Made by a program: the position numbers and the translations under genes. A stretch of 64,000 nt of DNA from Auanema rhodensis (taxonomy: Eukaryota > Animalia > Nematoda), in contig OZ059896.1 of the NCBI GenBank assembly GCA_964057225.1, positions 17,980,001 through 18,044,000 of the forward strand, in the 5' to 3' direction. Below are positions 16,027 to 39,002 of the stretch, in pieces. Each line of letters begins with the position of its first letter. The first letter of the stretch is position 1. Under the pieces are notes generated by a model that had not been told where the DNA came from, made no database searches, and was given only the letters and a program-made list of their open reading frames with translations.

Positions 16027-19000
16027 CTAACATGTATAAAGACTTGCAGCAAAAACAATATCCCTCTTAATAGCTGATGAAGCTAATTCCATTTTCTCAT
16101 ATAAATCTTGGTCTCCTACGATTCGAGCAGCATTTCTGAAAATTTAAAAACTTCACTTTTCTCGGACCTAATCGACCAGGGATTACTTTACAGAATAAAT
16201 TATTTTCAAAAAAACAAATTAAAAAAAAAAGAAAAATATGGGCAACATTACAAGACAGAAAAACATACCTAACATCTTTGCATAATTCACTCAATCGTTG
16301 GATACAACGAACAATCAAACCTTCTTGACACTGTGTTTTTTCCATAATTTCAGAAAATGGCTGTTAAATACATATATTTTTTTTGAAAACATTTAAAACA
16401 AACCTTGCCCAGAGCCCAATCATATACAATCGGCATCAAATCGAATCGTATTTCATCACCAACTTCAACTATTTGAACTTTTAGTTGTGCAGATGTTAAG
16501 TCTAATCGTTTAGAAACAGATAGCACATCATTTTTCAACTATTAGGCGAAAAAACTAGAACTTCACAAGAAAAAGCATTACCTCTTCAAACATTTTTCCT
16601 TCTGGTGTGGCTGTATCAAACTTGACACCATCTCCATTTTTGTATTGGCAAGTAAAAGCTGACAGCAAGGCAGCAACTTCAGCTGGAGTACGATCATGCA
16701 ACTTATTTTCAAGTAAAAGCTCAGCAACAAGTATTTCCTTGAAAAGTAGTTCTAGTGAATAAAGTCTAATTTAGAGGATTCTACCTGATAATGAATTTCG
16801 CAGGCTACCCGTCCTTTAAAGGTAACCATATTGTCTTTTCCGACATATCCTAGTGTGGTCAGCATCTAATATCAATTATATATTTTCTCAAAAACTATTA
16901 AAGCTCCACCTTCATGCGATCCTTATATTCATCACTAAGAAGCAAAGCGCCTGCTGAGAGTTCGAATTGCAGACGACTAATTTGGCTAGTTAAATCAACT
17001 CTTTCCAAAACAATTTCAATCTGAAATTTGCTAAATTCAGACTAAATATAAATAAAAACACTTATTACGTGATCTAACAATTCAGCACAGTGTTTAGCCG
17101 TATAAATAGTTGGATTAAGTAAATTATCTCTGAGGAATTTGACAGTTGTAGGCAATTCCAAATACTCCAAATTCACATAGCTGACTTCATTTTCTGGTTC
17201 GATAGTCTAACATAGTATATATTGAAGTAGTGAAAGAATTTTGTACAAAAGAAGAAGACTATAAGATAGAAAGCAAAACAGGGAGAAAGAACAAGACGTA
17301 GAGTGAGATATATAGAGAAAAAGAGAGTCATTGCGGTAATAAGTAATAGGTACAAACCTCAAAAGACGTCGATGCCCATTCATTTGCCAAGGAATTAATT
17401 TGTTGAAGAATTTTAACAATACTATGAGGTATTTCAGAAGACCTGTAACAATCATGATCCGTATTCTGTCTGTCAGGTAGGTAGATAGTTAAAAGCGATG
17501 TTGAGCGTATAATGAGGATGAGGAATAGGTGGAAAGAAGGATCGGCGAAACAATTACCACTTATAGGTCACTTGGTCAAACTCTTTTCCTCACTCACTCA
17601 CTTCTTTGGTCCGAATCGTGTCTATTTCTTAAAGTTACTCTAAGTCACTAAAACATTTCAAAATTTTCAACACATGCCGCAACTTCGACTATTTTTTCTA
17701 TTTTCACAAATAATTTTATTTATTTCCTTTCAAGGTCAGCTATAGTTTATATTTAGTTCATCCTATCAGCATATAAACCTCATTTTCTTATTTTAGTCAG
17801 TGCTGAGATAAATGTTTCTTCCGAATTAAACTGTGATTTTTCCTCACTATGTATGTGGAGGAATTCAACAGATGATTCGGGAGATTGGATTTTATCATCC
17901 CATGTCGACATTGATAACTCTAGAAGTATCATACCCATGAGAGAAGGAGATAGTTTGAGTTTACTCGAAAAATTCCTGTTTATTTATGAAATTCAGATGA
18001 ACCATTTGCCTATAGTGCAGGACTCATGGGTCGAACTCAGGCTATTTTGGTATCTGATGTTATTAGCTGTCAATTAGGTAATGGCTTTTCTCTATCGTAT
18101 CTCTATGAAACTTGAAGGTCTTTAGGAGGAGCGAATATCAAATATTGGTATTACCAAACAGGAATGCAATCACAACTGGAATTATGCATTCGTCAGCCAC
18201 CAGGAAGCAGGGACCCTGTGTCATTACAGTACGTGAAAAAAGAATTTCTGTTTAATTGAATTTTTCGAAATTCAGATGCTATGATGGAGTTTCTTCTACA
18301 CATGGTAACCAATGGATCTTTCGTGTCATCGAATTGCCACCTATTAGTCAACCATTTGAGGTTTCCAATACTTTCACAGTGTATAATAAGTTTTCATTTG
18401 AAGATAATCTTTCGAGCAACATATTACCCACCAACTGATATCATTGCTCTTGATGACATCATCTTCGAAGCAGCTTTATGCGGTTAGTATATCTTAAAAG
18501 TTGACACATCCTGAACTCACAAACTCACCAAAAGATCTGCTCAGGAATGAGCTTCTTTCTTATTCTTCTCCCAATTTTTCGAGTTTTTTTTCAAATTATA
18601 TTTCCTGAGCAGATCTTTTTCAGCTTTTGGGCAAAAAAAAAATGGACGAAGACGACATGTACGATCCACATCATCAGCATCACCTCCATTGATTGGATAC
18701 AATGACTGGCAATTACTTCGTGAATCCGAACATTTCAAAGGACAGACTATGCTCATTGTTTCACAAAATATGATGCAAGCAGAGAAGCCTATGAATCAAG
18801 AGATACCTAGTACAACAATTTCGGCTCCATTCACGTCTACACCTGCAACAATAACTACTTTTCCCAATCCGTTAGAAGCAATGTTTATTACAACGACAAC
18901 AACGACAACAACAACGGCCACTCTTGAGACAAGTTCAGAAACGATCATCAAATCAAGTACAATGATTGATCCTACAACTGTATCTTCTGGAGAAGAATCC

Positions 19001-22000
19001 AATAGCACATTGGAAAATACTGAAACATCTGTGGCACCGATAGTTCCCGAGCCAAATTTGCCGAAGGTTGATCCATTCGAGAACTTTGTGAAATTTCTTC
19101 ATCAAACTGCTCCTGTTCTACCGTACATTCCTGTGCTAGTCCGATCCTTACAGTCATCCATCGATTCCAGCAGGTTAGATCCTCCAATCGGAACAATAGT
19201 TAACGGAGTTCGCACTGCTAGTATGGTCAATCCAATTCCTGTATCTGCATCTCATTTCTATAACACGGAGCCACTACCTCCTCTTCCAATTCCTCCTTCT
19301 CAAACAGGAACAAACGACAATTTTTTGGTAGATATGGCAAAGAAATTCAACTTTGGGGAAGAAGAAAGCGTGATCAAACCTCAGTCCAGAAGACTGCCAG
19401 CAATAGCTCCTTTATCGGCAACCGAAAATTCTTTTGGAATGATAGCAACAACTTTAAGACCAATTTCCATAACCCCAACTATATATCCTGTTAAGCTTTT
19501 AAGGCAGAGGAAGTACGAGGAAAAGATACCCACATCAGAAAGCAATATTGATATGTCAAAGCTGAATACTAACGATATTAAAAAATTGTCTGAAATCCAC
19601 AACAAGCTGTTCGCCAAGAATGGCATGCAGTTCAGTACACCAATGCCTTTCCCTCAAACAACAACTCAGCTTATTGTTTTCCAAAAACCAACAAAAACGG
19701 AATCAGATGTAGCTAATAAGCTCACTGAATTAGCTAACATGCTACCTGATGGCGCATTGAGTGAGTTGACAGCGCTGAAAGATATTCCTGATTTGGAAGG
19801 CTTAACACGAGGAATGGATCTAAGTTTAATTAGAAAACCGGGAGGATTCATGACGCTCAAACAGCAATTCATAGATCGCCTAATGAGAAGAACAATGGGA
19901 TTGCCACTAGAAGATGCTTCTTTGTCTCGAAATGCTTTACCTCCACCTATTGTACCTTTTAAAGTTACAAAGAAAATGATGAGAGATAGAGCGCGAGCTC
20001 TGCGAAAACGAAAACTCCTCTAAATTTGCCAAAATATCTAGAGACCATTGTTACATGTAAAAAGTATAAATAAACTATAGCTCAATTCATGTTATTGATT
20101 ATTTGCATGATAATATATTTATATGGCATCAATTTAATTTAGAAATCAAAGCTCAAGGCGGTAATGAAGGTGGTGGAGGAACTTTTGGAGATACTCCTGT
20201 TGCACAACCACGTCTGCTTGAATTTGGAAAAGGAAATGGTTAGTATTGTCTAATTTCGCATTGATAATGGATATTACAATATAGAAATTGCATTAAACAA
20301 CGATAATATAAACCATAAGTGGGATAGTCGACGAGTTGTTCAAGATCCAGGTCATCGCCCTGTAAACTATGCTGCTCCGACATTTGAAGAAACAACTACG
20401 ATACAACCTTCACCCAGAATTGGACCACATTTCAATCCTATGTGTCCATCGTTGGATTGTGTGTTTGATCAGCAGGTTGGTTAAATTTTTCAACAGGAGA
20501 TGACCTAACAAACTTACACTGATAGACACTCTGCAATTACGTAACCAGTGAAAGTAGTAATCAAAACGCTACACTACGTAGCTGGATACTGTCTGATCGC
20601 GGTATTCTGAATTCTGTGACAGGTATTCCACACGATTTAAGTAGAAGTAAGAGTAATATACATTTCTTGATTGAAATATCAATTCAATATAGATGGTACA
20701 TTCATATACTCTGGAGGAACAAAAGTATCTTATGATGAAGTTTTCATATTATCCACGAAAGAGCCAATAAGTATTCAAGAAGAAGGCCGTTTAGATTTCT
20801 TTGTTTATATGGCTGGAATACATGGTCGATTACGCATTTGTATTAATACATTATCCTTGTGTCCTTTAACATTAGAAGGGAAAGATATTGATATTAATGC
20901 TCGCCAATGGAAAAGTCACCATATCCTCATAAGCCCTGGAACTCATGCAGTAAGCTCTGCTTTCACATAAAGTTGGGGAAAATAACCCAAAATTATGCAT
21001 TCAGATTCATTTTGTCGCCGATAGATTGAAAGAAAACTACTCAGTTGGATTGGACAGTATTCAATTACTCAATAAATTTGGAACAACATCGCTCGCATGT
21101 TGATACCTCTATTCCGGTTATGATATGATTTAAATATATTTTTTAATAAAGAATAGTTTGAAGTAACTAACCTGAAGCGTACTTGTGAACGAAGCTTAGC
21201 TTCTTCTATGATTTCATTAGCATTTATTTTAAAATGTTTCTTTGGCACACATACAATATCATCTAAAGTGATATCGTCAATCACTTTGAAGCACCCTCTT
21301 CCTAGATCATTATTTCCTATCCCATCTAAACCGTATTTACATATTCCTCTGACTCTGTGACATTCGTATGTCCAAGAAGAATTCTAAAACTTTCGAAATT
21401 TTTGGAAATAAAAATAAAGTAATTATGCCTCAGAAGGTTTAGGTTGAACAAAGTTATAAGCGTAGTTTTCATCGCAAGACACAAGAACTGAGTATTTCTT
21501 AGAATCACCAGAGGTAGAATCCTAAAAATAAAGTGACCTTCGTACCTTAATATAAAGCTTAAAAACCTTTAACAAAACAGCAATTTGATGATCCAATTTC
21601 CGGTCAGGATTGGATAGAACTAGTATCCGGCCTGATTGAAACACAATTGAACCTTGCTTAGTTTCTAAATTTAACGAAAATTTATATGCATAAAATATCT
21701 ATTCGTCTTCTGACTTATAAATTCTTTCCATATATCCTTCCTAACTGATAAATATTCAGAAATAGTTTTATAATAATCAGCTAGATTATCAGCACATAAT
21801 GAACAATTCAATTCACGTTTAAATTTAAGTTCTTCGACAGCCTGAAAACAATAAACTTGAATTAGAAAACTAAATGAAAATGCTCACGTTCTTAAGATCA
21901 TATTGCTTTTTCTTTTGTTCTCGAAGAGATGTTCGTTCAGCAAACGATCTTTGTAACATTTGCTCAATGTGTAAATGCTCTACACGAAGAAGGTTCAGTA

Positions 22001-33865: not shown

Positions 33866-34628
33866 GTATTCGCATTTAAGTATTTCCTATAAGGGGTTCA
33901 AATAGCTACAGTTTTAACGCGGTATATCAATTGTGATTTAATCCTAGCGGTTTTTGTCAGTGTCTAGCCATTCTGCCTTTGTTGCAGTAAAGTTTAATTC
34001 TAGTCTTAATTCTAGTAGAGTTTCAACATAGTTGTTGCAATAGTTTTATGATTATGAGCGTATTTATAAATTTCGCAGGTGTCTGATCTATAGTGAAAGT
34101 AAATTATTTTATTTTATTTTTGTCTTTATTAAGACAACCTATGGTGTCCTTCTATTTGCAACGTTTGATTCCCTTTTTATTAAATTATTTTAATTGATTT
34201 TCTTGCATCGTGCATCGTTCACACATTTCATTTCTTTCGCCTTATATTTTATATGGACAGAATGTAAAAAGAACTTGATCAACAATGATCTTTTCACCAA
34301 AATCGTAGTTAGTTGAAATGAAAAACAGAATATGAATATAGAATTTAATAGCAGAACCGTGATGCTGCAAATATGGTATGATCTGAAAAAATCAAACGTA
34401 TTTCAAACCAGTTAACTTTAAAACCTGTTAGCGAGAAAGCGACCACATTGTCAATTTTATGACGGAAACAATGAATCAAAAATTTTCAAAAAGTCAACGT
34501 ATGTAGTAGCTACACCACGTCATCTTTCGTTTCATCAGTATATATACATTGCTTGAACTTTATCAATGATTGTATGTGAACTTCAGACTGTTCTATTATT
34601 TATAACAAGAAAACATCGAAAGCAACTA

Positions 34629-35739
34629 TTTATTCAACGAATCCGAGGTAGAAAGTTCATAGTTTACATTGGTTAGAACGTATAGAAACTTATAATTATT
34701 TCGAAAAACTGCATATTAAATAAGATTCAAAGAAAAAACCGATGCATCTACATGAATAAAGAAGAGTCGTAACGTAATCGAGTGATGGGGATAACAAACA
34801 AAAAATCTAAATACTAAGAGCATTTTCATAAAGAGTACAGGCTAAAAGTTGCTTCGTTTTTTTTTCTTATAGCAGGATACATTATTACGAGTAATCTATT
34901 ATAACGAAGGAGAAGCATGCAAGAAACTGTTAACTGAATATAATAACTCACACAGCGGTATGAAATGAACATTTTGAAATCGTTGTACATGTAATATATG
35001 TAATATGTCGACTTAAAGTGAGAACAAACAAGGCTTAGCCGATAAGAGAAAATAGTAACCCATGAGAGCAACACACATGAGGGGCATTTAAGGTAATAGC
35101 TGTATTATGGTCAGATCAAAAAGAAAACGCGTATTAACGGATAAGGAAAGACTGATGTACTACATCATCACAAAAAATCCCTGTAAAACAGACTATGATT
35201 TGATTCACCAAAAATAGCAGTGAGTAGAGTAAATACTGGGATAACGATAACTAGGCATTTAAATACACGAGGATACCTGCAGAATGAATCACAATTATTG
35301 CAGCCTATACAATATCGAAAATGGACACAACCTAAGGCACGGTTAGTTTTAGAGTGACAAGGCCGAGAAAACCTTAAAATTAGAAAGTAAATCTCATTAA
35401 AAGTCACGGGTAAATATAGAATTGAGCTTTTGAAGGTACAGGAATCCGCACAATTATGACTAAAAATAGAGAAATCTTTGGCAACTGGTTAACGTATTAG
35501 AGATACTAAAGCACAACGGTAAGTGGTAATGAGCAAGAGGTAAGTGATTTCGGGAATGTGCCCGAGTGAAATGGCAAAGGCCAGACTAGAAGGCCAAAAC
35601 TAATGTAGAACTAACTCCATCTACGGGACCCGGAGCCTTTGGCACATGTAATCGAAGAGTCCAGAGATTCGATTTCCATGACATGGAAAACTTAAACGTT
35701 CACAATCAAAATAAAAAAAATATATAAAACAGATCCATG
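34629..35739 (-). promoter_or_regulatory. Long (~1.1 kb) lin-66 3'UTR with many miRNA seed matches
   Basis: Runs from the stop (35740) to AATAAA (+ strand TTTATT 34629-34634). Seed matches are listed in findings; the UTR end is inferred. Confidence 0.55.
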
Positions 35740-37657
35740 TTAGAGATGAAGACCCCCGAGAGAGCTAAGAAGATCAGTACCAAAAGGATCATAATACTTG
35801 ACTGTTTCAATAGGAGGATTGTCTCCAATTGGTGCAGGGCCACTACCGGGAGATAAGCGATCACCAGAAGAAGGACTAGTACTTTCGAGACTAGGAGGAC
35901 TAGCGGAGCCCCCGCTGATACGGGATATGGCATTACCGGAACGACAAGTGCAACAACAGATACATGCACCAGAATCATTTCTCATTGGCTCAGTTTGTAC
36001 AGCAACATTGGACGTAAGCTATAAACTTTAAATATGAAGGAAAAAAGATGTTAATCTAAAGTACCTTGATTCCGAGACCTGAGCCAATAACACCCTTAGA
36101 ACTGTAAGAATCCCTGTTTGTGAATTGAGGAAACATCTGAGGAGAAAATTGTTTGTTCAGCGACCCTACACCTGACATTGTCTAAACGGAGTTACATTTT
36201 TAAAAAATTGAAAGTTCAGTTAATCCTTACGTCAACGGGCATCATGTAGTCGTTAGAAAAAACAGGATTCACTTCCAAAGAGTGACCCCCGAAAGGCTGT
36301 TGAGCTGAAAGAGATCTCACAATAGGACGCGGAGCCGCATTATTATTATGATTCATGGGAGAATACTGAGATGGAATTGTATTCTGGGATACACTTTCAT
36401 TTTTGAAAGCCTGTAAATCAATTTTGGAACGTTTAACATAGCACCAAAGTAAAACGTACCAGTTTACAGAAACTAGCAAGATCAACATGAGGCAAATTAC
36501 GGCGAACTGAAACGTAAGTGCGATTTGGAAACATGGCGAAAATCCATGGATGAGAAACGATCAAATTTAAAAATTCTTGACGACCCTCTCCAATAGTATC
36601 TCGAATCTTAGATGACATTTCAGCACTAATGAAATAATCGTAGAGGCTCTGGATAGCAGTAACTCCTCCACGTCTAAGAAGGTAGGAGGCTAAGTTAAGG
36701 ACACACAAGTAAATTGCAGGATGCTGAAAACTTAAGTTAATAAATAATTGTCATTACTAAATAACCTGGAGTTGTACAGTATCATCTGATTTCAAAATGA
36801 AGAGATGTGAACGGCGTTCGATGAATTGACGTCTTTTAAGCGAGGAGGTTCCCACATACTTCAGCATATCGTGCTCACTAGCTTGTGCCATTTGAGAATG
36901 CAAACTAAAAATAGCAAAATTTTAATTGATATCAGTATGGCTTCAAACAAACCTGCTTAACTGAATTTTGTTAGTACCATGTCTTTGGAAAATAGTTAAC
37001 AAAGCAGGTATTGCTTGTTGCTCGTTATGCAAGTCATACGAATCTCTTGCATTTGTCGGAGTTGGGCTTATTGCTTCTAAATTAACTTCCTTTGAATCAA
37101 TAAAAACCACATCAGCATCCTAAATAAACACATTGAGTATTTCCGCCACATGATACAAAATCTCACATTTCCATACAATGGTTGAACCAATGTTGCAGTG
37201 TATTCGTTTGTTTCGTTCAGAGATGCTTGGAATGCCAATGTAAAACCGACGCGAAGAACAGATGTCAAATCATTCAGCATCTAAAATCAGTTGTAAATCA
37301 TAAAACAAACACCATAGAACAATATATGTAAAATACAAGCCCAGTAATCTACCTGATCGCAGAAATCCTTGAGTTGAAATGAGATAACCATCTCATCTTT
37401 GCATGTTATAAGGCCTGCTTTAGCGGAGAGCCATGTGAGTTGACCATAGCCACTGATCGATTCAGCCTTTGGTTGTACTACATCGAGTAATCTAGTTGAA
37501 CAAAACCCATTGGTTCCTAATCCTAAGGAGTTAACACCTACAACAAAATAAAATATTTGAAGAGATGATATTATTCACCATTGTTAGAACTGTATGATGT
37601 TCCCCAAATACTGTTTTGACCAGTTTTGTCAAAGAGAGAGCTCATTCCATATGCCAT
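35740..37657 (-). CDS. lin-66: LIN-66 heterochronic post-transcriptional regulator (cold-shock-like domain)
   Basis: MAYGMSSLF...GYGQLTWLSAKAGLITC...ISFQLKDFCDQMLNDLTSVLRVGFTLAFQASLNETNEYTATLVQPLYG...YVGTSSLKRRQFIERRSHLF...LASYLLRRGG...FAMFPNRTYVSVRRNLP closely matches C. elegans LIN-66 as I recall it. Confidence 0.88.
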
Positions 37658-38365
37658 TTTCGTTGGTAATAACTTAAGATAGAAAAACGATGTTCTTTTT
37701 TTCCATAGGATAAGTTTCCCAGAGCCTGAACATGAAAAAAATGAAAAGACTACTAGTACTACACTGATAACGTTTCAAAGAAGATAGTGACACACTGATA
37801 AGCAACCAAAACAAAAAATTTCAACATAACACAAAAAAAATCAAATAGACCGTATTTAATGCATGTATTTACATTACATATGAGCAAAAATGAATGATGA
37901 TGAAGTAACTAAAAGTTGCCACGCATGATATGAAACATTGGAATCATTTTCGCAGCATGAAATTTCGTTGAAAGATTTTCAGGGCGATGAACATAATTTC
38001 AAATGTAACGAGAAGAATGACATTTTCGTTGGTAATAACTCAAGATAGAAAAACGATGATCTTGTTTTCCATAGGATAAGTTTTTCAGAGCTTGAGCATG
38101 TTCAGAATAAGAAGACTACTACAACATCGATAATGTTTCCAGAAGAAAGTGACACAATGATAAGCTACAAAACTATAACTAGAAAAAACCAAACAGACTG
38201 TATTTAATGCATGTATTAACATTACATATGAGCAAAAACGAATGATGATGAAGTAACTGAAGGTTGCCACGCCTCTTGCAAAAACATGAAACATTGGAAT
38301 CATTCTCGCAGCATGAATTTGCGTTGAAAGATTTGCAGTGCGATGAACATAATTTCAAATATGAA
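37655..38365. repeat. Diverged ~365-bp direct tandem duplication of the lin-66 5' region
   Basis: Copy 1 (~37655-38010) and copy 2 (~38021-38365) both begin CATTTTCGTTGGTAATAACT and share long blocks (GTATTTAATGCATGTATT, ACATTACATATGAGCAAAAA, GAAACATTGGAATCATT, GCGATGAACATAATTTCAAAT), with scattered substitutions and indels. Confidence 0.92.
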
Positions 38366-38837
38366 GCAAAGTGAGAGAACAGAAAAGAGAAAAATAGTTC
38401 AGTAGCCATTATGAAAGAGATCCGTTTATATTATATTTTAAAAATTATGAAAGCCATAATAAAGAATAATGATGAAAAGAGAATAGGTATTTTCAAAAAG
38501 CATCTAATGTGGGGCGATCAAAAATGATAATTGCAAAAAAAAAGTTTTAACTTAAAAATGCTTTTAATTGTTGAATGAAGGCTATTTAACAGAAAATCAG
38601 AAAATGAAGAGCACAAGACCGTTGGCTTTGGGTGTACAATGCAATGCGACGCGCGAGAAATGACTCGAATGAGTGAGAGTTAGCATATATTGTCGTAGAG
38701 ACGCAGATACATGCGGCGGCACAGAGATAGAGGGGATGGGGTAGCAGTCAGTCGCCGAGTGTTTCGTACATCAATAACCTGACAGGCATCATAGGATGAA
38801 GAAGAAGAATAAGAAGAAGAGAAAAGGAAAAAGAGGA

Positions 38838-38892
38838 CGAAGAAGAAGAAGAAGAAGAAGAAGAAGAGGAGGGGGGAGGAGGAGGAGGAGGA
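38838..38892. repeat. (GAA)n/(GGA)n purine tract upstream of lin-66
   Basis: About nine GAA units followed by GAG/GGA repeats. Confidence 0.85.
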
Positions 38893-39002
38893 AAAAAAAG
38901 AAGAAAAAGAAAACGAGATGGTTGAATGAAAGCTATGCTAACTCTCCAGCCTAACATAAGATTTGTTGCTGCCTGTGCTGCTGCAATGCTCGTAGATAAT
39001 CG

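What the first reader, a model, noticed from the sequence alone, without database searches (positions are those of the whole stretch)
34629..35739. lin-66 3'UTR is tiled with seed sites for about ten conserved miRNA families: a candidate miRNA-activity integrator
Seen: the gene is on the minus strand, so target sites appear on + as the miRNA seed itself. These are let-7 GAGGTAG 34645-34651 (just upstream of the PAS), miR-71 GAAAGAC 35146, miR-236 AATACTG 35232, miR-67 CACAACC 35326 abutting miR-124 TAAGGCACG 35333, miR-1 GGAATGT 35553, miR-44 GACTAGA 35584 and miR-790/791 TTTGGCAC 35638. A head-to-tail run at 35530-35547 joins miR-87/233 TGAGCAA, a let-7 6-mer GAGGTA and miR-86 TAAGTGA. Two miR-2 6-mers sit at 35167 and 35288. 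Known: these are C. elegans seeds, and LIN-66 represses lin-28 post-transcriptionally in the heterochronic pathway. Inference: nine positions-2-8 matches in 1.1 kb exceeds a rough uniform expectation (~0.07 per 7-mer, about 2-3 over a few dozen families). This suggests feedback in which muscle, neuronal and temporal miRNAs all tune a repression cofactor. I scanned by eye, so selection bias is possible.
Basis: partly seen in the sequence, partly recalled or inferred. Interest (0 to 1): 0.72.

Follow-up and report, generated by a model that had tools for sequence, protein, structure and literature searches.

The report
Conserved microRNA sites in lin-66 tail
The untranslated tail of this roundworm's developmental-timing gene lin-66 really does carry an unusually dense set of microRNA docking sites that evolution has preserved, so the gene is very probably switched down by many microRNAs; this is a familiar kind of control on a gene not described as a target in any paper I could search.

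Summary
All seed strings sit where stated. RNA contigs show one unspliced 3'UTR, 34616-35739 on the minus strand, which contains every site and ends just past the only AATAAA. The gene is the lin-66 ortholog of an Auanema-type nematode.

Dinucleotide shuffles give 1.9 (P about 2e-4) and the antisense strand has none.

Enrichment alone would not survive the scan's look-elsewhere effect. A coding stretch in the same window reaches 7 hits. Conservation settles it:
- Against Auanema sp. JU1783, third codon positions and introns are near saturation. Only 27% of UTR 7-mers are intact, yet 12 of 13 seed matches are intact, against 24% for permuted seeds.
- The miR-44, miR-86, miR-87, miR-2 and miR-71 sites are kept in register in strongylids.
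- The miR-71 site and three unexplained motifs are also kept in Caenorhabditis.
- The miR-1, let-7, miR-236 and miR-67 7-mers are Auanema-only.

The "integrator/feedback" model is untested. Verdict: a new member of a known kind.

The parts
34616..35739 (-). lin-66 3'UTR (about 1124 nt, unspliced)
   Evidence: Four RNA contigs end at 34616-34627 and run without a gap into the last coding exon. The stop is TAA at 35740-35742.
35740..37727 (-). lin-66 coding region: nine exons, SL1-type trans-spliced 5' end at about 37727
   Evidence: Eight CT..AC (GT..AG on minus) joints, plus a loose end CAAACTTG (= CAAGTTTG on the RNA) at 37727. Exon 36460-36723 hits Lin-66-like winged-helix proteins.
34629..34634 (-). 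Only canonical poly(A) signal, AATAAA
   Evidence: Contig ends lie 2-13 nt beyond it. It is conserved in Auanema sp. JU1783.
34645..34666 (-). let-7 7mer-m8 site with extended 3' pairing, 10 nt upstream of the poly(A) signal
   Evidence: The duplex is -21.5 kcal/mol against -15.8+-2.1 for shuffled flanks, P=0.0135. The seed stands as a conserved island in JU1783. The 3' pairing is not significant there, and the site is absent from strongylids and Caenorhabditis.
34980..34992 (-). Overlapping miR-76 (TCGTTGT) and miR-246 (TACATGT) 7mer-m8 sites
   Evidence: Both lie in a 19-nt perfectly conserved run within a poorly conserved region. miR-76 is also present in Haemonchus and Ancylostoma. The miR-246 seed comes from memory.
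35146..35152 (-). miR-71 7mer-m8 site, the most deeply conserved
   Evidence: It is aligned in register in JU1783 and three strongylids, and collinear in C. remanei, C. bovis and two Caenorhabditis-like RNA contigs.
35167..35172 (-). miR-2 6-mer, 21 nt from the miR-71 site
   Evidence: It is in register with a 7-mer CTGTGAT in strongylids.
35092..35133 (-). Train of three unexplained conserved motifs following the miR-71 site on the mRNA: TACGCGT (35127-35133), TGATCTG (35112-35118), GCTATTACC (35092-35100)
   Evidence: These are the only non-low-complexity 7-mers, besides the miR-71 site, TCACTTA and the poly(A) signal, shared by the Auanema, Haemonchus, C. remanei and C. bovis UTRs, and they occur in the same order. 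No stable fold (z=+0.76).
35232..35238 (-). miR-236 (miR-8/200 family) 7mer-m8 site
   Evidence: It is conserved in JU1783 inside a 17-nt perfect run and is not seen in strongylids or Caenorhabditis. The seed comes from memory.
35288..35293 (-). Second miR-2 6-mer
   Evidence: It lies inside a 24-nt perfectly conserved run.
35326..35341 (-). Abutting miR-67 7mer-m8 (35326-35332) and miR-124 8mer (35333-35341) sites
   Evidence: Both 7-mers are kept in JU1783. miR-124 7- or 8-mers occur elsewhere in the Dictyocaulus and L011 UTRs.
35530..35590 (-). Dense cluster: miR-87 (35530), let-7 6-mer (35537), miR-86 7mer-A1 (35541), miR-1 (35553), miR-44 (35584)
   Evidence: The cluster lies in runs of 51, 19 and 26 perfectly conserved nt. 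The miR-44, miR-86 and miR-87 sites are in register in three strongylids, while the miR-1 and let-7 6-mer sites are not.
35638..35645 (-). miR-791 (miR-96/182-type seed) 8mer site
   Evidence: GTGCCAA is present in JU1783 at the same place but misaligned by MAFFT. The seed comes from memory.

Best explanation
The 1.12-kb 3'UTR of the Auanema lin-66 mRNA carries a set of selectively maintained microRNA target sites: at least eight, and probably about thirteen, 7- to 8-mer seed matches plus several 6-mers. Each site would let a miRISC complex (Argonaute ALG-1/2 with GW182 AIN-1/2) dock and lower LIN-66 output through deadenylation and translational repression. That would keep LIN-66 low and adjust it by tissue and stage. 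The old core is miR-71, miR-2 and miR-86. miR-44, miR-87 and miR-76 are shared with strongylids. miR-1, miR-124 (as an 8-mer), miR-67, miR-236, miR-791 and a poly(A)-proximal let-7 site were added or kept in Auanema. Shown here: the sites lie in the real UTR, they exceed chance, and they are preferentially conserved. Inferred: that microRNAs read them and that the result is repression.
For: The UTR is defined by RNA contigs. Enrichment with an external list is 8 against 1.9, P=2e-4, with 0 antisense; permuted seeds give P=4e-4. The sister species JU1783 has the same sites in the same order, 12 against 2.1 expected. Neutral sites are near saturation (third codon positions 0.43-0.47 identical, introns 0.45), while 12 of 13 seed 7-mers are intact against 27% of all UTR 7-mers (P=1.4e-6). 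Controls: permuted seeds 24% intact, antisense-orientation hits 1 of 5. The four sites in the poorly conserved distal third are all intact against an 8% background (P=4e-5). The miR-44, miR-86, miR-87, miR-2 and miR-71 sites are kept in register in Dictyocaulus, Haemonchus and Ancylostoma. The miR-71 site is collinear in four Caenorhabditis UTRs, two of them defined by transcripts. In C. elegans, LIN-66::GFP with its native 3'UTR is 'nearly invisible' but becomes visible with the let-858 3'UTR (PMC11184513), which fits a repressive native UTR.
Against: The cognate miRNAs were not shown to exist in this species; support is limited to earlier unchecked scan notes and phylogenetic bracketing. There are no Argonaute-binding or reporter data. 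About two thirds of the 26 conserved runs of 9 nt or more hold no listed 7-mer, so other factors also act, and some seeds may sit in blocks conserved for other reasons. Enrichment is not significant in Caenorhabditis (4 against 2.9). A coding stretch in the same window reaches 7 hits by chance.
Confidence: 0.78

Rival explanations
1. The UTR is conserved mainly as a platform for RNA-binding proteins or other trans-factors, and most seed matches are passengers inside those blocks.
For: There are 26 perfectly conserved runs of 9 nt or more (438 nt), and only about 8 hold a listed 7-mer. Runs reach 51 nt, far longer than a seed. The motifs TACGCGT, TGATCTG and GCTATTACC are conserved as deeply as the miR-71 site and match no seed on my list. 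Block B is unstructured, as a binding platform would be.
Against: Conservation of blocks does not explain why the sequence holds four times more seeds than shuffles, and only in the sense orientation. Seeds in the poorly conserved distal third stand out as islands. Across strongylids, what survives in block A is largely the seed matches. No PUF/FBF motif and only one STAR motif were found.
Confidence: 0.13
2. It is a chance cluster picked out by an eye scan across thousands of windows (selection bias).
For: A 1124-nt coding stretch in the same window reaches 7 hits with the same list. At P of about 2e-4 per window, a genome-wide scan would be expected to produce some such clusters.
Against: Conservation was measured after the selection and independently of it: 12 of 13 against a 27% background, in-register retention in strongylids, and miR-71 retained in Caenorhabditis. 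The sister species shows 12 hits against 2.1.
Confidence: 0.03
3. The UTR works the other way round, as a sponge that titrates many microRNAs (a competing endogenous RNA).
For: Many different seeds sit on one transcript. LIN-66 genetically buffers miRISC function (bioRxiv 10.64898/2026.07.07.737059).
Against: There is mostly one site per family. I have no abundance measurement for this species, and contig word-depths cannot rank expression. LIN-66 is reported as not abundantly expressed in C. elegans (PMC11184513). No TDMD-style extensive pairing is seen apart from a modest let-7 case.
Confidence: 0.03

Closest known systems
Heterochronic-gene 3'UTRs with multiple microRNA sites (lin-14, lin-28, lin-41, hbl-1 in C. 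elegans)
   Same: A long 3'UTR of a developmental-timing gene carries conserved seed matches. One is a let-7 site with some 3' pairing close to the poly(A) signal. Repression through miRISC is the expected mechanism (established knowledge; background).
   Different: Those UTRs are dominated by repeated sites for one or two temporal families (lin-4, let-7). Here there is mostly one site each for about ten to thirteen different families, most of them tissue-type rather than temporal. The let-7 site is confined to Auanema.
MicroRNA 'target hub' genes (many different miRNA families converging on one regulator's 3'UTR)
   Same: The seed density is about four times background, from many families, on a post-transcriptional regulator.
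   Different: Hub status was defined statistically in mammals. Here it is backed by site-by-site conservation, and it weakens with phylogenetic distance: it is not significant in Caenorhabditis.
Feedback loops in which a small-RNA pathway component is itself a microRNA target (e.g. let-7/LIN-28, let-7/Dicer; established knowledge)
   Same: LIN-66 associates with AIN-1, NHL-2 and NTL-1 and acts in parallel with miRISC (bioRxiv 10.64898/2026.07.07.737059). Its own mRNA carries conserved miRNA sites.
   Different: No experiment shows that miRISC activity controls LIN-66 level, so the loop is only a proposal. The sole indirect hint is the 3'UTR swap in PMC11184513.

Membership tests
lin-66 ortholog | Sequence homology to the LIN-66 winged-helix region (Pfam PF26288 WHD_lin-66) | tested here: met
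   Exon 36460-36723(-) hits 57 proteins. The best is Auanema sp. JU1783 (81% identity, E=3e-42), followed by proteins named 'Lin-66-like winged helix domain-containing' from Dictyocaulus, Pristionchus, C. bovis and Ascaris. The JU1783 protein carries PF26288. The local Pfam copy gave only a sub-threshold WH_Egal hit on the single exon.
lin-66 ortholog | Orthology rather than the Caenorhabditis paralog; conserved neighbourhood | tested here: met
   The gene order Uso1/THOC7 - lin-66 - convergent GH47 in JU1783 matches the window. THOC7 lies upstream of lin-66 in C. bovis. The strongylid and Auanema proteins are closer to CRE-LIN-66 (46-52% identity) than the Caenorhabditis paralog group is (37-40% identity to the strongylid query).
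lin-66 ortholog | Cold-shock domain required for function (PMC11184513) | not tested
Canonical animal microRNA target site | Watson-Crick match to miRNA nucleotides 2-8 (or 2-7 plus A1) inside the transcribed 3'UTR | tested here: met
   Seeds for let-7, miR-71, miR-124, miR-1, miR-87, miR-44/279, miR-67, miR-76 and miR-86 were read from Table 1 of PMC4524723. The rest come from memory.
Canonical animal microRNA target site | Preferential evolutionary conservation of the seed match over flanking UTR | tested here: met
   12 of 13 intact against 27% background; controls 24% and 1 of 5. In register in strongylids for five sites. miR-71 collinear in Caenorhabditis.
Canonical animal microRNA target site | Cognate miRNA present and co-expressed in the species | not testable with these tools
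   Only the 64-kb window is available, and it holds no Rfam miRNA. Earlier scan notes report lin-4, miR-2, miR-63/64, miR-43/44, miR-87 and let-7-family hairpins elsewhere in this genome; I did not check them.
Canonical animal microRNA target site | Argonaute occupancy and seed-dependent repression | not testable with these tools
   No CLIP data could be reached. The only indirect support is the C. elegans 3'UTR swap (PMC11184513).
let-7 complementary site with 3' supplementary pairing (lin-41 LCS type) | Seed match plus significant pairing to the let-7 3' half, conserved | tested here: inconclusive
   Window: -21.5 against -15.8+-2.1 kcal/mol, P=0.0135. JU1783: -17.5 against -16.8, P=0.34. 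No let-7 7-mer in strongylids or Caenorhabditis.

The most novel reading that the evidence does not exclude
lin-66 mRNA may be an ancient sensor of miRISC activity. Its UTR would read a core of miR-71, miR-2 and miR-86 (plus lineage-specific additions and three unidentified conserved motifs). When microRNA activity drops, LIN-66 would rise. LIN-66 represses the same early timing genes by a 3'UTR-independent route, so it would compensate. This homeostatic loop would explain why lin-66 loss is so strongly enhanced by alg-1 and ain-1/2 mutations.
Probability: 0.25. Interest if true: 0.75.

Novelty: new member of a known kind. Interest (0 to 1): 0.55.

Why it matters
[quoted passage not shown] A 2026 preprint reports that it buffers the microRNA pathway in developmental timing (bioRxiv 10.64898/2026.07.07.737059), and it also tunes eIF3-dependent translation in neurons (PMC11184513). 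No paper I could search describes lin-66 itself as a microRNA target. Showing that its long 3'UTR holds selectively maintained sites, with a miR-71/miR-2/miR-86 core shared by Auanema, strongylid parasites and Caenorhabditis, has two uses. It offers a concrete explanation for the very low native LIN-66 level seen in C. elegans. It also makes a feedback between miRISC and its parallel cofactor directly testable in C. elegans. The mechanism itself, seed-mediated repression, is ordinary.

Tried and rejected
1. Tried to obtain a complete C. elegans miRNA seed table from the literature. Only the M. incognita table was usable, so the 55-seed list is from memory and serves only as a secondary analysis.
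2. Tried to find Argonaute CLIP or CLASH evidence for lin-66. No usable supplement was held, and my recalled clone name B0513.1 mapped to a different gene ID in one file, so I dropped it.
3. C. elegans LIN-66 itself did not appear in either word search, and C. briggsae LIN-66 (P0082) could not be located. I used C. remanei, C. bovis and two Caenorhabditis-like RNA contigs instead.
4. L005 (C. briggsae P0023) proved to be the paralog, not lin-66. It has a short UTR with no listed site and was excluded.
5. Pristionchus mayeri (L004) has no AATAAA within 2.6 kb of the modelled stop and shows no alignable block, so it was left uninterpreted.
6. The idea that the plus strand encodes miRNA genes was rejected. 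Matches do not extend beyond the seed (apart from the let-7 pairing, which is target-like), there is no Rfam hit and no stable fold.
7. The idea that block B is a conserved RNA structure was rejected (z=+0.76). MAFFT misaligned the Caenorhabditis rows, so no covariation test was made.
8. PUF/FBF, STAR, ARE and GGAG motif scans do not account for the conserved blocks.

Full report
WHAT IS THERE

The only slip is the let-7 6-mer, which starts at 35537 rather than 35536. The stretch 34616-35739 is A-rich on the plus strand and has 35% G+C. It contains a single TTTATT (AATAAA on the minus strand) at 34629-34634.

Four public runs from one study hold this sequence as spliced contigs. The contigs show eight CT..AC joints, which are GT..AG introns of a minus-strand gene. 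They end at 34616-34627, 2-13 nt past the AATAAA, and run unbroken into the last coding exon. They begin at 37727 with a loose end that reads CAAGTTTG on the RNA, the 3' end of an SL1-type spliced leader by my recollection. The 3'UTR is therefore real, about 1124 nt long and unspliced, and it contains every claimed site. The convergent mannosidase-like (GH47) gene ends at 34174-34197 and does not overlap it.

THE GENE

I searched one exon by reference (36460-36723, 88 aa). It hits 57 proteins. The best is Auanema sp. JU1783 CAI4228087.1 at 81% identity. Next come proteins that their sources name 'Lin-66-like winged helix domain-containing protein', from Dictyocaulus, Pristionchus, Caenorhabditis bovis, C. 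japonica and Ascaris.

The JU1783 locus has the same gene order as the window: Uso1, THOC7, lin-66, then a convergent GH47 gene. THOC7 also precedes lin-66 in C. bovis. Caenorhabditis has a second, more divergent paralog. The Auanema and strongylid proteins are closer to CRE-LIN-66. The gene is therefore the lin-66 ortholog of an Auanema-type nematode, as earlier scan notes had suggested for this genome.

IS IT MORE THAN CHANCE?

This gives 25 distinct seeds.
- 5000 dinucleotide shuffles give 1.91+-1.35 (P=0.0002), and the antisense strand has none.
- Letter-permuted seed sets give 2.1+-1.4 (P=0.0004).
- No other 1124-nt stretch on either strand of the 64-kb window reaches 8.

It gives 36 6-mers against 17.1+-4.0, and 5 antisense matches, which is near expectation.

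One caution applies. The same sliding scan finds 7 hits in a stretch at about 18.5-19.6 kb that lies inside a 444-aa ORF. This finding was also picked from thousands of windows. Enrichment alone would therefore not be decisive.

CONSERVATION: THE DECISIVE TEST

I aligned the gene and the UTR with Auanema sp. JU1783.
- Third codon positions are 0.43-0.47 identical and introns 0.45, so neutral sites are close to saturation.
- Coding DNA is 0.73 identical.
- The UTR is 0.67 identical overall but 0.85-0.94 between 35016 and 35615, higher than the coding sequence.
- Only 27% of UTR 7-mers are perfectly conserved, yet 12 of the 13 seed matches are (binomial P=1.4e-6). All 8 from the external list are conserved. 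The thirteenth (miR-791) is present but misaligned.
- Controls behave as background: permuted-seed hits are 24% conserved and antisense-orientation hits 1 of 5.
- In the poorly conserved distal third, where background is 8%, all four sites stand as conserved islands (P=4e-5). The poly(A)-proximal let-7 site is one of them.
- JU1783 shows the same sites in the same order, 12 external-list hits against 2.1 expected.

DEEPER CONSERVATION

The Auanema UTR aligns in two collinear blocks with the sequence downstream of lin-66 in Dictyocaulus, Haemonchus and Ancylostoma (E down to 1e-9). Block A keeps TCTAGTC (miR-44), TCACTTA (miR-86, 7mer-A1) and TTGCTCA (miR-87) in register. The miR-1 site and the let-7 6-mer are lost there. 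Block B keeps TGTGAT (miR-2, a 7-mer in strongylids) and GTCTTTC (miR-71).

In C. remanei, C. bovis and two Caenorhabditis-like RNA contigs, the miR-71 site is again present. The RNA contigs have transcript-defined 3'UTRs of 1375 and 2066 nt. The site is followed in the same order by TACGCGT and TGATCTG, and in C. remanei and C. bovis also by GCTATTACC.

Site counts across ten UTRs:
- miR-86, miR-71 and miR-2 sites occur in all ten.
- miR-44, miR-87 and miR-76 7mer-m8 sites occur in Auanema plus strongylids (miR-76 is missing from Dictyocaulus and has two matches in one Caenorhabditis-like contig, L011).
- miR-1, let-7, miR-236 and miR-67 7mer-m8 sites occur only in Auanema, apart from one miR-236 site in an unidentified species (L009).

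Enrichment of the external list is strong in Auanema. It is moderate in strongylids (7-8 against 2.7-3.9, P 0.006-0.04). It is absent in Caenorhabditis (4 against 2.9).

HOW IT MOST LIKELY WORKS

Shown: the seed matches lie in the transcribed UTR, exceed chance, and are maintained by selection.

Inferred from the established mechanism of animal microRNAs: each site recruits Argonaute and GW182, which lowers LIN-66 output by deadenylation and translational repression.

The sites abut or overlap in places: miR-67 with miR-124, miR-87 with the let-7 6-mer and miR-86, and miR-76 with miR-246. Neighbours in such pairs cannot be occupied together. That fits alternative use in different cells rather than cooperation. 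Other pairs lie 21-56 nt apart (miR-2 to miR-71, miR-1 to miR-44), where cooperation is possible.

The let-7 site pairs along nearly the whole of let-7 in this species (-21.5 against -15.8+-2.1 kcal/mol, P=0.0135). This is not so in JU1783 (P=0.34). I therefore treat the 3' pairing as weak evidence.

Indirect support comes from C. elegans. An endogenous LIN-66::GFP with the native 3'UTR is 'nearly invisible', whereas the same knock-in retaining a let-858 3'UTR is visible in muscle, epidermis and neurons (PMC11184513).

WHAT REMAINS OPEN

The 'integrator' or feedback idea is plausible, because LIN-66 associates with AIN-1, NHL-2 and NTL-1 and buffers miRISC mutants (bioRxiv 10.64898/2026.07.07.737059). 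It is untested.

About two thirds of the 26 perfectly conserved runs of 9 nt or more carry no listed 7-mer. The TACGCGT / TGATCTG / GCTATTACC train is as old as the miR-71 site and matches no seed I know. Block B has no stable fold (z=+0.76), and no PUF/FBF motifs are present. Other trans-factors, whether lineage-specific miRNAs or RNA-binding proteins, therefore also read this UTR.

I could not verify that the cognate miRNAs exist in this species. The window holds no Rfam family, and the earlier scan notes on miRNA hairpins in this genome are unchecked leads.

COMPARISON AND VERDICT

This UTR works like the multi-site 3'UTRs of other heterochronic genes and like microRNA 'target hubs'. It differs in carrying mostly one site for each of many families, most of them tissue-type rather than temporal.

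None of the 12 papers that mention lin-66 in the searchable library appears to treat it as a microRNA target. I read the four most relevant; the others I judged from title and abstract. It is a new member of a known kind. It is solidly supported at the sequence level and interesting mainly for the testable loop it suggests between miRISC and LIN-66.

STEP LEFT OUT

Identification rests on one exon, on its homologs and on synteny.

Noticed in passing
window 35092-35133 (minus strand); also L003, L006, L007, L008, L002, L010, L011: Three short motifs, TACGCGT, TGATCTG and GCTATTACC, follow the miR-71 site in the same order in Auanema, strongylids and Caenorhabditis. They match no microRNA seed on my list, and the region has no stable fold. 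What binds them is unknown.
   Followed up: partly
window 35030-35050 (minus strand): TTCTCTTATCGGCTAAGCCTT is perfectly conserved between the two Auanema species and nearly so in three strongylids (TTCTCTTATCGGCTCTGCCTT). No known motif could be assigned.
   Followed up: partly
window about 18470-19600, plus-strand transcript sense: This is the second-densest stretch of seed matches in the window: 7 hits with the external list (miR-79, miR-239 x2, miR-76 x2, miR-1, let-7). It lies inside a 444-aa ORF (18689-20023), so it is probably chance, and it shows that such counts do arise without function.
   Followed up: partly
window 37727: The contigs carry CAAGTTTG (RNA sense) beyond the genomic match at the 5' end of lin-66. 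This is the end of an SL1-type spliced leader, so the mRNA is trans-spliced.
   Followed up: no
window 38748-38957: A simple-sequence tract reads as poly-Ser/Pro on one strand and poly-Arg/Lys on the other. It lies upstream of lin-66, and the read-laying tool skipped it as a repeat (38787-38922). No transcript contig covers 37800-39599.
   Followed up: no
L005 (C. briggsae) and the proteins P0016, P0023, P0097, P0099, P0102: Caenorhabditis carries a second, divergent lin-66 paralog. The C. briggsae copy has a short downstream region (AATAAA about 290-380 nt after the stop) with none of the listed seed matches, unlike true lin-66.
   Followed up: partly
window 36460-36723 and 36766-36903 (minus strand): Two lin-66 exons give sub-threshold Pfam hits to the Egalitarian winged-helix domain (WH_Egal; E=7e-5 and 0.05). 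This hints that the LIN-66 winged helices are related to those of Egalitarian.
   Followed up: no
L003, L006 (strongylids), L002 (C. bovis): A bestrophin gene lies downstream of lin-66 in strongylids and C. bovis, whereas Auanema has a convergent GH47 mannosidase there. The Heterorhabditis model (P0002) fuses lin-66 with bestrophin, which is probably an annotation error.
   Followed up: no
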